Under the pieces are notes generated by a model. It saw nothing but the letters and a program-made list of their open reading frames with translations. It did not search any database and had not been told where the DNA came from. DNA of 63,836 bases, counting the filler, from Octopus bimaculoides (Eukaryota), in the NCBI RefSeq assembly GCF_001194135.2. It is 4 parts of 4 records of this genome, joined end to end, with 100 filler letters (N's around TTAATTAATTAA, not from the genome) between each part and the next. Parts side by side here need not be neighbours in the genome. Positions count along the whole stretch, not along the records: positions 1 to 21,273 come from NC_068986.1; 3 more parts are not named here. One strand, written 5' to 3'. A program made the position numbers and the translations under genes. Below, one piece after another: positions 638 to 11,890 of the stretch; within the stretch, counting starts at the first letter, position 1; each line of letters starts with the position of its first letter.

Positions 638-1145
<508 letters not shown>

Positions 1146-3041: not shown

Positions 3042-4025
3042 NNNNNNNNNNNNNNNNNNNNNNNNNNNNNNNNNNNNNNNNNNNNNNNNNNNNNNNNNNN
3101 NNNNNNNNNNNNNNNNNNNNNNNNNNNNNNNNNNNNNNNNNNNNNNNNNNNNNNNNNNNNNNNNNNNNNNNNNNNNNNNNNNNNNNNNNNNNNNNNNNNN
3201 NNNNNNNNNNNNNNNNNNNNNNNNNNNNNNNNNNNNNNNNNNNNNNNNNNNNNNNNNNNNNNNNNNNNNNNNNNNNNNNNNNNNNNNNNNNNNNNNNNNN
3301 NNNNNNNNNNNNNNNNNNNNNNNNNNNNNNNNNNNNNNNNNNNNNNNNNNNNNNNNNNNNNNNNNNNNNNNNNNNNNNNNNNNNNNNNNNNNNNNNNNNN
3401 NNNNNNNNNNNNNNNNNNNNNNNNNNNNNNNNNNNNNNNNNNNNNNNNNNNNNNNNNNNNNNNNNNNNNNNNNNNNNNNNNNNNNNNNNNNNNNNNNNNN
3501 NNNNNNNNNNNNNNNNNNNNNNNNNNNNNNNNNNNNNNNNNNNNNNNNNNNNNNNNNNNNNNNNNNNNNNGAGAGAGTTATTAATATTATATATATATAT
3601 ATTTATTGTGCGTGTGTTTGCCAGGACGAGTGTGTTTGAATGTGCACTTGTGGTTTTGCATGGATATATACCGTGTGTAAGAGGGAAATATAAAATAATT
3701 ACTGACACAATTCTAGTAAAAAAAAACAAACATATAGGATAGATGTAGAAAGTGAACGCGATGGAGGGATGTGAAGGCAATGTATGTGTGTGTGTCTACA
3801 TGTATGTATGTGTGTATGTGTGTGTATATTTAAAATGTTTGTGCACGTTTTGTTTTTTGTATGTGTGTATATATATGGGAGTGGATTGTGGGGTGACAAA
3901 GCCAAAAGTCATTATATTCAGATATTTTTTCTCATATGTTGGACACTAAAATGTCAATAGTAATATGTGAGTATACGTATATACTTTTTTGCACACACGG
4001 AGGCATGCCCACACACGCGCGCGCG

Positions 4026-4410: not shown

Positions 4411-4745
4411 TATATATATATTTATATATGGAAAATATATCAACGTAACGTATACTAAATGTAAAAGCCCTTCACTGAACAAAACATTAAATGCCATTTT
4501 GTTTGTCGGACGTTCTTTGCTGTATAACGCCCCTGAATATTACTTTTGTCTTTTTGTTTTCTTTCCTGTTGAATAGATATTGATATCTGGATCATTACTA
4601 GCATCAACACTTCAACCGCCACCTACATTACCAATGCAAACATTGAAATCATTACCACTCAGTAAAATGACCAGCATTATATGAACTACCTGAGCCATTA
4701 CCTCTGCCAGAACTGCTATAGCACTAGCGCCTATGCTAACACTAG

Positions 4746-5064
4746 CACTCCGTCGGTTACGACGACGAGGGTCCCAGCTGATCCGATCAACGGAACAGCT
4801 TGCTCGTGAAATTAACGTGCAAGTGACTGAGCATTCCACAGACACGTGTACCCTTAACGTAGTTCTCAGGGAGATTCAGCGTGACACAGAGTGTGACAAG
4901 GTTGGCCCTTTGAAATACGGGTACTACTCATTTTTGCCAGCTGAGTGGACTGGAGCAACGTGAAATAAAGTTTCTTGCTCAAGGACACAACGCGTCGCCG
5001 GGAATCGAACTCACGACCTTACGATCATGAGCCGAATGCCCTAACCACTAAGCCACGCGCCTTC
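4746..5064 (-). mobile_element. Full-length tRNA-derived SINE (family C1) with 13-bp TSD
   Basis: A-box TGGCTTAGTGG and B-box GAGTTCGATTCCC at the right end on the minus strand, followed by CORE-like TTGTGTCCTTGAGCAAG. TSD ATGCTAACACTAG at 4733-4745 and 5065-5077. Confidence 0.93.
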
Positions 5065-5077
5065 ATGCTAACACTAG

Positions 5078-5890
5078 AATCACTAGCAAAACCAAAACTG
5101 CATCCGCCGTTACCAACATCATTATACCCACCATCTTAACAAAAATTGGAAGCTCTATAACTAGAACAACCATCATACCATTGTAACCACCATTGTAACA
5201 CTGTAATCACGACCACAAGGACGCATCACAATTCCCATCACCACAACAACTACCACCGTCACTACAAACAATACTACAACCACTATCAGCAACAGCAACA
5301 CTAAAGCAACCACTACAACTACATTCATCACAATCACTTAGAGGAAGAGGACATCCACTACAACCAACAGCACCATCACTACTGCCACTACTATTAACAC
5401 CACCGAGCACTACAATTAGTACACTTCGACCATACCACTACCTCTGAAAATACCACTATAACTACCGTCCATTACAGCTAACACTACAGCCTCTACAGCC
5501 ACAATGAAAACCACCTCACACTGCATCAGCACAACCACTACAGTCAACGCCCACAATATCACTATCACTGCTGTCGTTACAACTACCGCAACTGCTATCG
5601 TTATAACTACCACTAATAACATCATCTCTACAACTTCTGCAACCATCAACACCATCAGCATAACAACAACACCGCCAGCATAACAACGTCAACAACAGCA
5701 ACACTCCCGTTATCACCATCAACAAATCTCCACGGCTAATACCTACACTACTATCTCCTCAACAACCGCTAACACTACAACTGCAATGAAAGCCACAGCA
5801 GCCACCACTACTACAGCCACCAACACCACAACCACTACCAGTAATATGAGCAGTACCACCAGAGCCACCACCACCACCAGAATCACCACC

Positions 5891-5936
<46 letters not shown>

Positions 5937-6047
5937 TTACTACTACTACTACTACTTCTACTACTATAGCTACTACCACCACCACAACAATTACCAGTAT
6001 TACGAGTAGTACCACCACCACCACAACCACCACTATTACTACTACTG

Positions 6048-6098
<51 letters not shown>

Positions 6099-6276
6099 TT
6101 ATTATTACTACTACTACTACTACTACTACTATTACAATAGCCACCACCACCACCACCACAACCATTCCAATATTACGAGCAGTACCACAACAGTCAACAC
6201 CGCAACCACCACCTCCACAACTACCACTAATACAGCTGGTGCTACTACTACCACCACTACTACCACTACTACTACA

Positions 6277-6311
<35 letters not shown>

Positions 6312-7154: not shown

Positions 7155-7735
7155 ACACAAACACATGCAAACGTTTAGTCTGTTTAAAAAAGCTTTTCTT
7201 TTTCGTCATTCTACATATGTTATTTGTATTTTTTTTTTCTTTTTTTGCTAAAATTTATGTTGAAACTCTTCATCGATTTATTGAGAATAGAAAAATAAAA
7301 GACAAAAAAAAGAACAGCAAAACAATACATATTGGTATTTAGCAGGTGAGCAACATTCTCTGTCTCGGAGGGGTGGGTGACATACAGACAAACAAACACG
7401 CAGATATTGAAATAAAACACTATGCAATACTGTAAACAAACATGTCATACAACAATAGAACACATCGCTTTCATCTATCTTTCATTTTAACCCAAACTCC
7501 TCCTATTCCTCTCCATTTTCTTTCTTACCCCTTATCTCCCTTACTTCTCTCCTTCTCCTACCACTCTCCCTCTTTTGCCTTTCTCTTTTCGTGCTCCTTC
7601 TCAGCCTCTTCTTTGCATCTCTCATTACCAGCCTCAAAGTTTAAATGAATTTATGATTAACTTACCGAGTTTACACTTCAATTCCAAAAGCCTTAACCAC
7701 ATGGTGACGATTGCGTCTCTAGGTGTTCGCTGGAT

Positions 7736-7757
7736 CTGCTAGAAATATCAGCTAAAC
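7736..7757 (+). repeat. Dispersed repeat motif CTGCTAGAAATAGCAGCCAAAT (further copies 28579-28600, 52495-52516, and 44617-44638 on the minus strand)
   Basis: Four 22-bp near-matches in the window, probably the conserved core of another interspersed repeat family. Confidence 0.55.
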
Positions 7758-8094
7758 TTTTCTCAGAGTGCACGGCTTGCCGTCTTATGAAAATGACACA
7801 TTGCATAATGTGTTACAGTGTTCCTTGCAGCTTGAGAAAAGATGAGATGATCACAGATGAAACTGTGAATTTGCTCATAGATCTGCTCTGTCAGGGCTGA
7901 CATGTTTAAATGATAAAAACAAGGATACGTACCAACGAGAGATTTGGAGCAATTATGGCCTTCTTCCACCGTGGTTCTTCTTCCACGTGCTAGAAATAGA
8001 AGGCAATTCCTATTCTCTTCAAATCACACTCTCACCGCTATAAACGGTGAAGGTGACTTTAGAGTATGTCTTCCTTAGATCTAATACATCAAGA

Positions 8095-9842
8095 CAAAAT
8101 TTTATGAACTGTCGCCTTCGTAAATTGAGTCAAATTTCTACTCGACTCAAATTGATCAACTGTCTGGCTGGCCAAAGTCCATCAATTGTTTGTTGCTTAT
8201 AAATGAATTAACTGTCCACTTAACTATGACCAACTGCTAACTTGGCTAAATTCGATCATCTGTCAACATAGTTAAATGAGAGCAATTGTTCAATCTTCCA
8301 AATTCGATCAAATGTACACGCGGCAAAAGTCGATCAACTTTTCAAAGGGCTTAACACGATCAACTCTCCATTTGGCAAAATTTGATCACTTGTAAACTCT
8401 ACCCAATTCGATCTGATGTCAGCTTTGCTAAATTCAGTCAGATTTTCATTTAGCTAAATTTGATCAACTTTCCATTTTCTCAAATTCGATCAACTGTCAT
8501 TCTTCCAAATTCAATCAACAATCCACATGAACAAATTTGAACAGTCTGCTTGTCCAAATTCGATCAACTGCTGAGTTTGCTAAACTCGTTCAACTTTCTA
8601 TTTGGTCCAATTCGATTATCTGCCCGCTTGAATAAATTCGATCAACTGTCCATTTCAGTAAAATTGATCAATAAGTACATATGCTGAAATTATACATTTC
8701 ACAAATTTCTATTTTCCATCAACTGTAATTTTTTTTAAAATTCGATAAACTGTCCACATGGATAAAATCGATTAACTGTCTATTCTGCAATGAATTCGAT
8801 CAACTATCTTTTTAGCTAATTTCGATCAATTATGCATCCTGCCAAATTCGATCAGCAATTCACTTCGCCCAATTAGAAAAAGTCTCCGTTTTGCTAAATT
8901 AGATCAATTGTTCATTTCTATAAATTCGATGAAATGTCCACTTCATAAAATTCTATCAATTGTTCATTCTTACGATCAACTATCCATTTACAAAATGGGC
9001 AGTTGATCAACTAAATCTGATCATCTGTCTGGTTTGCCAAATTTGATCAACTCTCCATTTGGTAAAATTCAACTAGCTTTCCATTCTTGCAAATTCAATC
9101 AAATGTTCCTTTAAAGAAATTCGATCAACTGTCCACTTGACTAAATTTGTTCACTTGGCATTTTGATTAAATTCAATCAAGAGTGCAGTGCATTTGGCTA
9201 AATCAATCAATTGTCCATTCATTCTTCCAAATTCGATGAAATGTTCACACGGCTAAATTGGATCAGCTGTACATTTGACTAATTTCTATCAAATGTCCAT
9301 TATGCCATATTTGATCAACTGTACACTCCACCTATTTCAATCAACTATCAGCTTTGTTAAATTCTATTAACTGTCCATTTTTGCTAAATTCGACCGATTG
9401 TCCGTTCTACTAATCCATTTGGCCAAATCCGATCTACTATCAACTTGAACATTTTCGATCATTTGTGCATTTGGTCAAATTCGTCCTTCTGTCTCGCTAG
9501 ACTAAATTCGATCTACTGTCCACTTGACCAAATTTGATCAACTGTCCTGTTATATAAATTCAATCAACTGTTTACGTGGCCAAATTCGATGAATTGTCGA
9601 CTTGAGCAAATTCTGCTAGCTGTTCGTTGCAATAACATTTGTCGCTATAACAGGAAAAGCTAAATTCCGTCGACTGTCCATTTGATCAAATTCGATGTCC
9701 TGCGGCTTGTTTTAGTTTGATCAACTGTCCTCCTGAACAAATTCGATTAAATGTCCACTTCTATTAAATTTGATCATTTGTTCACTAGGCTAAATTCATT
9801 TAACTGTTCACTTGACTACATTCGATCACCGGTCCACTAGGG
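8095..9842. repeat. Diverged 26-bp tandem array, about 67 units, consensus YAAATTCGATCAACTGTCCATTTGGC
   Basis: Nine consecutive units of exactly 26 bp at 8247-8480. The GATCAAC core recurs throughout. The period is not a multiple of 3 and there is no ORF. Confidence 0.92.
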
Positions 9843-10805
9843 ATAAAAATAAGCTCCAACATCAGCAGGATATAAAATGCAATTAAATGTCATACCGCTA
9901 AAAAGTCCTAATGAAAATCAGTTTTGTGTAAATTAAGGTATTTCAGATTTAGGGATATAATAATTTGTTTTTTTTATTTTGATCTGAAATCATGTTGAAA
10001 TCGATGGTTATATATTAGAACTATTTATTTAAACATATAAGTATATTCCATCGCTTTAAATGCTCAAATTTAAACTCACTGAGTGTTCATAGGGGAAGTC
10101 AGACGCAAATTTTTGTGAACATAACTGAAGACAAAAAGTAAAGGACAAGAAGTCCAGTATATTCATGGGATCTAATATGGTTCTCACAAAATATAACAAA
10201 GTTTCATCTTTTCCATACCTGAAAATTTATACATTCCGAAAACAGAAACGATAAACCCAATAAAAACTACTTAATCAATGACCATCACTACTTAAGATTT
10301 ATCACAAAATAAGAGGGGCATGTGGAAATATAAATATTGATAAGCAAAAAAGATGTTATTAGGATGTTGAAGAATCATACGCAAAACTAAGAAGCTTAGT
10401 ATCGCCAGCCGATAAAATACAACTTGGCAGCAGGTACCATGGCTTTGTAAGTTATTTTAGGTGCTTCTACTGCCGCGAGTCGACAGAAATATCAACTCGA
10501 ATGCTTCAATCTTAACCTAGGACGATTTCTAGGTTATGACAGTTCATTTCTTTTGCAGCTGACTAAATCGACCCAACGTGAAGTAAAGCACCACGGTCCT
10601 TCAGGAATTGAGTTCACGAATATTTTGATCATGAAGCGAACGCCCTTTCAATGAGTTCCTCAGTCTGCATGTCTCGTTCTTATTGGTTGCGCGTGGTATA
10701 AACACGAGGCAACTTTCGGTGTCGGCAGTGTTATTAATTAAGCATTTTTATCTCTACAGTACATAAATATGTACATGAGTATCTATGCTTGTATGTATGT
10801 GTGTA

Positions 10806-10845
<40 letters not shown>

Positions 10846-11125
10846 NNNNNNNNNNNNNNNNNNNNNNNNNNNNNNNNNNNNNNNNNNNNNNNNNNNNNNN
10901 NNNNNNNNNNNNNNNNNNNNNNNNNNNNNNNNNNNNNNNNNNNNNNNNNNNNNNNNNNNNNNNNNNNNNNNNNNNNNNNNNNNNNNNNNNNNNNNNNNNN
11001 NNNNNNNNNNNNNNNNNNNNNNNNNNNNNNNNNNNNNNNNNNNNNNNNNNNNNNNNNNNNNNNNNNNNNNNNNNNNNNNNNNNNNNNNNNNNNNNNNNNN
11101 NNNNNNNNNNNNNTAGATGGATAGT

Positions 11126-11707: not shown

Positions 11708-11890
11708 TTCTCCTCTCATAAAGGTGCATGCAAGGCTTGAAATTTGGAGGAGCTGGTTAATCGATTAGATTGACTCCAGTACTTGACTAGAACTGTATTT
11801 TATCTTTCAAAGATGAAAGACAGTACTTAACTAGTACTGTATTTTATCTTTCAGAGATGAAAGATAAAGGTGAGTCCATGGGGATCAGAA
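11708..11890 (-). mobile_element. SINE family A, degenerate fragment with internal duplication of about 45 bp
   Basis: tcgattagattgactccagtacttgactagaactgtattttatc resembles the reverse complement of the family A 3' region. The segment cagtactt...agatgaaaga is duplicated. Confidence 0.5.

What the first reader, a model, noticed from the sequence alone, without database searches (positions are those of the whole stretch)
8095..9842. 26-bp array with rigid spacing, diverged sequence, two dyads per unit and a higher-order repeat
Seen: about 67 units. Nine successive units (8247-8480) are exactly 26 bp, although each differs from the consensus YAAATTCGATCAACTGTCCATTTGGC at many positions. Each unit has a TT(C/T)GATCAA dyad, and unit junctions form a second dyad (ATTTAGCTAAAT 8449, ATTTGGCCAAAT 9417, ATTTGATCAAAT 9680); the dyad centres alternate 16 and 10 bp apart. 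Units at 8299-8428 recur 929 bp later (9228-9357), including distinctive tails (actcYac, cagctttg). The array is non-coding because 26 is not divisible by 3. Inference: substitution tolerance with few indels suggests constraint on phasing (2.5 helical turns), as in a protein-binding or chromatin-organising array or the subterminal array of a large transposon. It is unlike the surrounding slippage microsatellites.
Basis: partly seen in the sequence, partly recalled or inferred. Interest (0 to 1): 0.7.

Follow-up and report, generated by a model that had tools for sequence, protein, structure and literature searches.

The report
Old decayed 26-bp minisatellite in octopus DNA
This is a real but old and decaying stretch of about 67 head-to-tail copies of a 26-base unit in non-coding octopus DNA; its regular spacing is what ordinary decay gives, and its only unusual feature is that 16 bases of each unit are better preserved than the other 10.

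Summary
The array is real. It spans 8097-9845 with about 67-68 units on the + strand, consensus AAATTCGATCAACTGTCCATTTGGCT. Units are 24% diverged from the consensus and stops occur in all six frames.

- **Spacing:** there are 0.09-0.15 indel events per substitution. Dispersed SINE-like copies in the same window give 0.095. A run of nine exact 26-bp intervals has P=0.39 given that 66% of intervals are exact.
- **Dyads:** TT(C/T)GATCAA occurs in only 13 of 68 units. Junction dyads are no commoner than column shuffles give.
- **Higher-order repeat:** the 929-bp recurrence is the best diagonal but only nominally significant (8 of 300 shuffles at one window size).

One signal survives. Columns 1-16 are clearly better conserved than columns 17-26. 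This holds after correcting for base type, in ungapped units, in both halves of the array, and against star-like and tree-like neutral simulations.

No terminal inverted repeats, long terminal repeats, transposase or other copies were found. A repeat elsewhere in the window matches Octopus bimaculoides proteins.

Best reading: an old, static minisatellite. Its conserved 16-bp box hints at sequence-specific constraint, past or present, which one locus cannot settle.

The parts
8097..9845 (+). Degenerate tandem array of about 67-68 units of 26 bp, consensus AAATTCGATCAACTGTCCATTTGGCT
   Evidence: Wraparound alignment: 1719 aligned columns, 420 substitutions (24.4%), 62 indel events. Core pattern: 27 matches against 0.01 expected. 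TRF finds period-26 fragments.
8248..8507 (+). Block of ten units in perfect register (nine exact 26-bp intervals)
   Evidence: Unit starts. A run of this length has P=0.39 given 66% exact intervals.
8288..8443 (+). First copy of a possible old intra-array duplication of about six units
   Evidence: 72.4% ungapped identity to 9217-9372 at lag 929, the best diagonal (D18, 20). Only nominally significant.
9217..9372 (+). Second copy of the possible intra-array duplication
   Evidence: Same as above.
8987..9010 (-). Single inverted unit. With the preceding unit it forms a hairpin-capable palindrome spanning 8974-9008.
   Evidence: Inverted-repeat pairs I4 and I7. DNA fold -10 kcal/mol, z=-4.7, 0 of 200 shuffles fold as well.
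9634..9661 (+). Example of a broken unit (28 bp, barely recognisable). Other broken stretches are at 8660-8737, 8971-9012 and 9409-9424. Most alignment gaps cluster in these units.
   Evidence: Alignment rows. 66% of intervals are exact, against 44% in the uniform-indel simulation, so indels are clustered.

Best explanation
This is an old, now static minisatellite in a non-coding, repeat-rich stretch of an Octopus genome.

**How it formed and decayed**
- Inferred: a 26-bp unit was amplified head to tail by replication slippage or unequal exchange.
- Shown: all units have since decayed independently and to the same degree. Substitutions are AT-biased, the frequency of small indels is ordinary, and there are a few larger accidents (one inverted unit, several broken units, perhaps one six-unit duplication).
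- Shown: nothing indicates a constraint on phasing, selection for dyad symmetry, or a periodic higher-order repeat.

**The one departure from neutral decay**
- Shown: a 16-bp box (AAATTCGATCAACTGT) has changed two to four times less than the 10-bp tail.
- Inferred: the box was under sequence-specific constraint at some stage, most simply as a protein recognition site while the array was being built or carried. At this locus it is now eroding.
For: **Uniform, independent decay**
- Mean pairwise unit identity is 0.625 and stays between 0.61 and 0.645 at every lag.
- There is no gradient from centre to edge, and no correlation between head and tail mismatches per unit.
- No discrete unit types exist, and linkage between columns is weak.

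**Ordinary mutation pattern**
- GC-to-AT changes run at 0.298 per site against 0.118 for AT-to-GC.
- The indel-to-substitution ratio is 0.09-0.15, against 0.095 in SINE-like copies of the same window.

**Erosion of the box**
- The 16-bp box is fully intact in only 3 of 68 units, and GATC in 30 of 68.

**Non-coding, and no sign of a mobile element**
- Stops occur in all six frames.
- No Rfam family, tRNA, Pfam domain, terminal inverted repeat or long terminal repeat was found in or around the array.

**Box against tail**
- Base-stratified contrast is 0.173, against 0.005 +/- 0.024 in simulation.
- It is 0.189 in the 39 ungapped units.
- A cyclic window scan picks column 17 as the start of the least conserved stretch, with depth 0.101 against a simulated maximum of 0.048.
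- Tree-like (Yule) growth models reach that depth in at most 1% of runs.
- The per-column profile is reproducible between the two halves, r=0.78.

**Host**
- A dispersed repeat in the window matches three Octopus bimaculoides proteins at 82-91% identity.
Against: - The box-against-tail contrast is not expected for a purely neutral array formed in place, so 'no function ever' is not shown.
- Four tail columns (20, 23, 24, 26) are each dominated by one alternative base. That looks more like old unit variants than relaxed constraint, yet linkage between them is weak.
- No second copy or orthologue could be examined. Whether the array formed here or arrived inside a mobile element is therefore open.
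- The local yardstick for the indel ratio rests on only 11 gaps.
Confidence: 0.6

Rival explanations
1. The array is the internal or subterminal repeat block of a mobile element, probably non-autonomous. The 16-bp box was a binding site for a transposase or Rep protein and was kept intact in the master copies. This inserted copy has only decayed since.
For: - It explains a conserved box with a free tail and locally regular spacing without requiring any function at this locus.
- Uniform divergence of all units fits one insertion date.
- From memory: mollusc genomes carry satellite-like arrays inside Helentron and MITE-type elements.
Against: - No terminal inverted repeats or long terminal repeats bracket the array at any scale in the window.
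- The flanks carry no transposase or other Pfam domain.
- The flanks are unique within the window.
- All but one of about 67 units point the same way, in one block, unlike the two-ended, mixed-orientation subterminal repeats of CACTA, hAT or Mutator elements.
- No other copy was found by the peptide search or the DNA pattern scans. These collections hold little animal DNA, so this is weak evidence.
Confidence: 0.2
2. The array is a host regulatory or architectural element. It would offer about 65 sites for a sequence-specific DNA-binding protein (box AAATTCGATCAACTGT), currently maintained by selection, acting as an insulator, a chromatin organiser or a protein sink.
For: The positional conservation bias is robust and reproducible in both halves of the array. 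The architecture of conserved core plus variable spacer resembles known binding-site arrays.
Against: - Only 3 of 68 boxes are intact, with a mean of 3 mismatches per 16-bp box.
- The indel ratio is ordinary and the register drifts.
- Dyads are not preserved beyond per-column conservation.
- Broken and inverted units are tolerated.
- The neighbourhood is SINE-like repeats and microsatellites, with no detectable gene.
Confidence: 0.12
3. The array is an artefact of assembly or of chance similarity, or it is a coding peptide repeat.
For: The scaffold has six N gaps, five of them preceded by a dinucleotide microsatellite.
Against: - The array lies in 7.3 kb of uninterrupted sequence between the gaps at 3570 and 10846.
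- Every unit is different, so a collapse or duplication artefact is excluded.
- The core pattern gives 27 matches against 0.01 expected.
- Stops in all six frames exclude coding.
Confidence: 0.02

Closest known systems
Minisatellites (tandem repeats with 10-100 bp units) and short-unit satellite DNAs that have conserved and variable monomer segments
   Same: - Unit of 26 bp, head-to-tail array of 1.75 kb, non-coding.
- Formation by slippage or unequal exchange is the standard model.
- From memory: uneven variability along the monomer ('conserved boxes') is widely reported for satellites, for example in Arabidopsis 180-bp repeats and in Tribolium and Palorus satellites.
   Different: This array shows no sign of ongoing homogenisation. 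Neighbouring units are no more alike than distant ones, so it behaves as a fossil rather than a turning-over array. Copy-number polymorphism is untested.
Binding-site arrays carried by mobile elements, such as the Su(Hw) site cluster of the Drosophila gypsy insulator (from memory)
   Same: A short conserved core is repeated at roughly 26-28 bp spacing with variable spacers.
   Different: - The gypsy array has about 12 sites inside a defined retrotransposon with a known binding protein.
- Here there are about 67 units, no element boundaries and no known protein.
- Most boxes carry several mismatches.
Subterminal repeat regions of CACTA, hAT, Mutator or P class DNA transposons
   Same: Many copies of a short motif that could serve as a transposase binding site.
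   Different: - Those motifs sit next to terminal inverted repeats at both ends, in both orientations and irregularly spaced.
- This array is one block in one orientation.
- No terminal inverted repeats were found.
Higher-order-repeat satellites (alpha-satellite type)
   Same: One multi-unit stretch recurs 929 bp (36 units) later at higher identity than background.
   Different: It is a single, short recurrence of about six units and only marginally significant. It is not a periodic higher-order structure. Identity by lag is flat.

Membership tests
Minisatellite / short-unit tandem array | Repeat unit of about 10-100 bp | tested here: met
   The unit is 26 bp. 43 of 64 start-to-start intervals are exactly 26.
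Minisatellite / short-unit tandem array | Many head-to-tail copies at one locus | tested here: met
   67-68 units lie on the + strand between 8097 and 9845, with one inverted unit.
Minisatellite / short-unit tandem array | Non-coding | tested here: met
   The consensus has stops in all six frames. The array has 28-51 stops per frame.
Minisatellite / short-unit tandem array | Copy-number variation between individuals (VNTR behaviour) | not testable with these tools
   Only one sequence of the locus is available.
Higher-order-repeat satellite | Multi-unit blocks repeat periodically and are more alike than neighbouring units | tested here: not met
   Unit identity is flat at all lags (0.61-0.645). 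There is one recurrence at lag 36 units, reached by 8 of 300 shuffles at 156 bp and not significant at 104, 208 or 260 bp.
DNA-transposon subterminal repeat array | Terminal inverted repeats bracketing the element | tested here: not met
   No inverted pair brackets the array in 7170-10845 or across the whole window. The only similarities between the left and right sides are the SINE-like copies and a microsatellite stretch.
DNA-transposon subterminal repeat array | Motif copies in both orientations near both ends | tested here: not met
   All 27 core matches are on the + strand in one block. There is one inverted unit.
DNA-transposon subterminal repeat array | Transposase coding sequence or remnants (autonomous copies) | tested here: not met
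   No Pfam match at or near a curated threshold in 20 open stretches from the flanks and the rest of the window. A non-autonomous copy would lack a transposase anyway.
DNA-transposon subterminal repeat array | Multiple dispersed genomic copies with shared flanks | not testable with these tools
   No octopus genome is searchable here. Metagenome hits were 20 single chance matches. Viral contigs gave none. The peptide search gave none.
Protein-binding-site array (insulator-like) | Conserved core with variable spacer | tested here: met
   The contrast between columns 1-16 and 17-26 is 0.173 after base stratification. It exceeds every star-like simulation and at least 99% of tree-like ones.
Protein-binding-site array (insulator-like) | Spacing kept by selection | tested here: not met
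   The indel-to-substitution ratio is 0.09-0.15, against a local yardstick of 0.095, a non-significant difference. The register drifts over the array.
Protein-binding-site array (insulator-like) | Demonstrated occupancy or a known binding protein; orthologous conservation | not testable with these tools
   This needs chromatin data, a pull-down and other octopus genomes.
CENP-B-box-bearing satellite | Motif nTTCGnnnnAnnCGGGn (recalled from memory) | tested here: not met
   The consensus reads TTCGATCAACTGTCC. The TTCG....A part fits, but CGGG is absent (read from the consensus).

The most novel reading that the evidence does not exclude
The 16-bp box AAATTCGATCAACTGT is the recognition site of a sequence-specific DNA-binding protein, either a host factor or a domesticated or active transposase. 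The array would then be a selected cluster of about 65 sites that organises local chromatin or titrates that protein in octopus cells.
Probability: 0.12. Interest if true: 0.55.

Novelty: new member of a known kind. Interest (0 to 1): 0.22.

Why it matters
If it is an ordinary fossil minisatellite, it matters little beyond repeat annotation of octopus genomes.

It does serve as a worked example. Locally perfect periodicity in a diverged array is expected from a normal indel-to-substitution ratio and should not be read as a phasing constraint.

The conserved box is the only lead. If the same box is conserved in orthologous or dispersed arrays, it would point to a DNA-binding protein with many clustered sites in cephalopod genomes, where repeat-driven genome organisation is of current interest.

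Tried and rejected
**Searches for other copies or a known family**
- **Metagenome contigs:** a scan for the 18-base core gave 20 loci, each with a single match and no array. These are chance hits.
- **Viral contigs:** none.
- **Protein search:** a consensus translation with the stop read as Q found nothing among 1592 candidates.
- **Exact look-ups:** four window ORFs are not on record.
- **Rfam and ARAGORN:** nothing in the window.
- **Literature:** no octopus or cephalopod satellite or minisatellite of this kind turned up. No usable empirical indel-per-substitution figure was retrieved either.

**Ideas tested and dropped**
- **CpG decay:** I expected the C/T alternation at column 6 to reflect CpG decay. 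Columns 6-7 are no more mutable than other C or G columns, and CpG observed/expected is 0.98.
- **Two or more discrete unit types explaining the variable tail:** no excess of near-identical tails appears, and linkage between columns is weak.
- **Unit derived from the neighbouring SINE-like repeat:** the alignment score equals that of shuffled consensus sequences, 170 of 300.
- **Alignment artefact causing the box/tail contrast:** the contrast persists in 39 ungapped units and is absent from simulated arrays run through the same aligner.
- **Helical-phase periodicity of AA/TT:** there is no power near 10.4 bp, and even the 26-bp line is lost over the whole array because the register drifts.
- **LINE reverse-transcriptase reading of ORF 19998-20216 (a guess from memory):** no Pfam support.

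Full report
**What is there**

The window is a gapped eukaryotic scaffold. It has six internal N runs, is about 33% G+C, and is dense in di- to tetranucleotide microsatellites.

Between 8097 and 9845 lies a single tandem array with a 26-bp unit. A wraparound alignment to a cyclic consensus converges on AAATTCGATCAACTGTCCATTTGGCT and cuts the region into 67-68 units. The 19-base core matches 27 times at 3 or fewer mismatches, always on the + strand and only inside the array. Shuffles predict 0.01 matches. TRF sees only five fragments of period 26, at 57-75% matches, because the units are so diverged.

Across 1719 aligned columns there are 420 substitutions, or 24.4%. That is about 0.30 substitutions per site after Jukes-Cantor correction. 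There are 62 indel events, and 43 of 64 start-to-start intervals are exactly 26 bp.

**Host**

A dispersed repeat occurs at 4743-4914 and 20619-20788 (91% identical). Its translation matches three Octopus bimaculoides UniRef proteins at 82-91% identity. The window therefore comes from that species or a close relative.

**Coding potential**

A 26-bp unit could encode a 26-residue repeat over 78 bp. What excludes coding is that the consensus has stops in all six frames. The actual array has 28-51 stops per frame.

**Spacing**

The nine successive exact intervals (8248 to 8482) are real. The indel count depends on the gap penalty and gives 0.09-0.15 events per substitution. Counting only net phase breaks (21 intervals that are not 26 bp) gives 0.05.

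As a local yardstick I used dispersed SINE-like copies within the same window. They show 11 gap openings per 116 mismatches, or 0.095. Neither count for the array differs significantly from this (Fisher p=0.12 and 0.28). From memory, neutral animal DNA spans roughly 0.04-0.16.

Given that 66% of intervals are exact, a run of nine or more has probability 0.39. Indels are clustered in a few broken units: 66% of intervals are exact, against 44% when the same number of indels is scattered uniformly. Those broken units reflect larger accidents:
- an inverted unit at 8987-9010, which makes a hairpin-capable palindrome;
- degenerate stretches at 8660-8737, 9409-9424 and 9634-9661.

Over the whole array the register drifts. 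The in-phase lags move from 0 to about 10-19 modulo 26, and a periodogram loses even the 26-bp line. The spacing is therefore regular only locally, and no more than ordinary decay allows.

**Dyads**
- TT(C/T)GATCAA is present in 13 of 68 units, not in each. GATC is intact in 30.
- The perfect 8-bp palindrome needs T at column 6. This is an ordinary C-to-T change, no commoner than at other C columns.
- The junction dyad reaches 5 of 6 complementary pairs in 8 of 67 junctions. Shuffling each column independently gives 5.9 +/- 2.1, and 114 of 500 shuffles reach 8.
- 10-15% of random shuffles of the consensus carry dyads as good.

The dyads are mild properties of the consensus. They are not a conserved feature.

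**Higher-order repeat**

The stretch 8288-8443 against 9217-9372 is the best diagonal in the array, at 72.4% ungapped identity against about 62% background. Shuffling the order of units reaches that value in 8 of 300 trials at 156 bp. At 104, 208 and 260 bp shuffles reach the best observed diagonal in 79, 50 and 168 of 300 trials (at 260 bp the best diagonal is no longer lag 929). A count of shared non-consensus bases gives 29 of 1000 at six units and is not significant at other lengths. Raw identity gives 622 of 2000.

A single old duplication of about six units is plausible. There is no periodic higher-order structure, because mean identity is flat (0.61-0.645) at all lags.

**Mode of decay**
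- Units are equally diverged along the array, with no centre-to-edge gradient.
- Head and tail mismatches per unit are uncorrelated, and per-unit counts have nearly the variance expected for independent columns.
- There are no discrete unit types, and column pairs show only weak association. The smallest p is 0.003 in 325 tests.
- G/C-to-A/T changes are 2.5 times as frequent per site as the reverse.
- The single CpG is not hypermutable.

This is the picture of one old amplification followed by independent decay without further homogenisation.

**The surviving signal**

Conservation differs strongly by column, and base type explains only part of it. After stratifying by consensus base, columns 1-16 are 0.173 more conserved than columns 17-26. 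Arrays simulated with the observed substitution spectrum and indel rate, and passed through the same aligner, give 0.005 +/- 0.024; none of 120 reach the observed value.

The contrast holds under every check I made:
- It is 0.189 in the 39 ungapped units.
- It remains 0.112 when the four most variable columns are dropped (0 of 200 simulations reach it).
- An unbiased cyclic window scan picks column 17 as the start of the least conserved stretch, with depth 0.101 against a simulated maximum of 0.048.
- Tree-like (Yule) growth models reach that depth in at most 1% of runs.
- The per-column profile agrees between the two halves of the array (r=0.78).

Columns 20, 23, 24 and 26 are each dominated by one alternative base (for example T29/C27 and G32/A23). 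That hints at old unit variants, but linkage among them is weak.

I cannot explain this bias by neutral decay alone. It points to sequence-specific constraint on AAATTCGATCAACTGT at some stage.

**Context**
- No terminal inverted repeats or long terminal repeats bracket the array, either nearby or across the window.
- The flanks are unique within the window.
- Twenty open stretches from the flanks and the rest of the window give no Pfam match near threshold.
- There are no Rfam families and no tRNAs.
- The unit is unrelated to the neighbouring SINE-like repeat.
- Searches for other copies found nothing meaningful. The collections available hold little animal DNA, so this is weak negative evidence.
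- No paper describing such an octopus repeat was found.

**Verdict**

The most likely reading (0.6) is a fossil minisatellite. It has ordinary indel behaviour and a conserved 16-bp box that records past constraint.

A transposon-borne origin (0.2) would explain the box neatly but lacks any structural support here. A currently selected host binding-site array (0.12) is not excluded, but several facts count against it: only 3 of 68 boxes are intact, the register drifts, and broken and inverted units are tolerated.

The finding is a new member of a known kind and of low to moderate interest. The test that would decide is comparison with other octopus genomes, which could not be run here.

Noticed in passing
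window 4743-4914 and 20619-20788; also 20830-21000: Two direct copies of a dispersed repeat, 91% identical (D19, 54). Translations of this repeat match three Octopus bimaculoides UniRef proteins at 82-91% identity, so the repeat is exonised or mis-annotated in gene models. By eye, the adjacent 20880-21000 looks like a tRNA-derived SINE head on the minus strand, but ARAGORN calls no tRNA.
   Followed up: partly
window 991-1048, 2040-2097, 2831-2888, 12285-12342; related pieces at 21151-21196 and 18993-19064: A 58-nt SINE-like segment (CTGAGTTCAAATTCCGCCGAGGTCGACTTTGCC...GGGGTCGATAAAA) occurs at least four times (D20). The first two copies sit directly after long (TTA)n/(TAT)n microsatellites, as if the microsatellite were the element's tail.
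   Followed up: partly
window 3042-3570, 10846-11113, 14409-14609, 16962-17507, 18303-18463: Each of these assembly gaps (N runs) begins right after a dinucleotide microsatellite, (TA)n, (AT)n or (AC)n. The scaffold breaks are therefore caused by simple repeats.
   Followed up: no
window 5000-6311: A 1.3-kb stretch with strong C-over-G skew (GC skew about -0.6). It consists of CAN/ACC-type short repeats and ends in about 139 copies of ACT. The long 'ORFs' on both strands are low-complexity artefacts.
   Followed up: no
window 11777-11864: Two tandem copies of a 44-bp unit at 93% identity, unrelated to the 26-bp array.
   Followed up: no
window 8974-9008: A head-to-head junction inside the array, created by one inverted unit, forms a 14-bp-stem hairpin (-10 kcal/mol, z=-4.7). 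It is the kind of scar left by a fold-back or template-switch event.
   Followed up: yes
window 7925-7935 (minus strand) and 10555-10570 (plus strand): By eye there is a GTACGT donor-like site on the minus strand just left of the array, and a tttcttttgcag acceptor-like site right of it. No coding evidence was found in the adjoining open stretches. Whether the array lies in an intron is unknown.
   Followed up: partly
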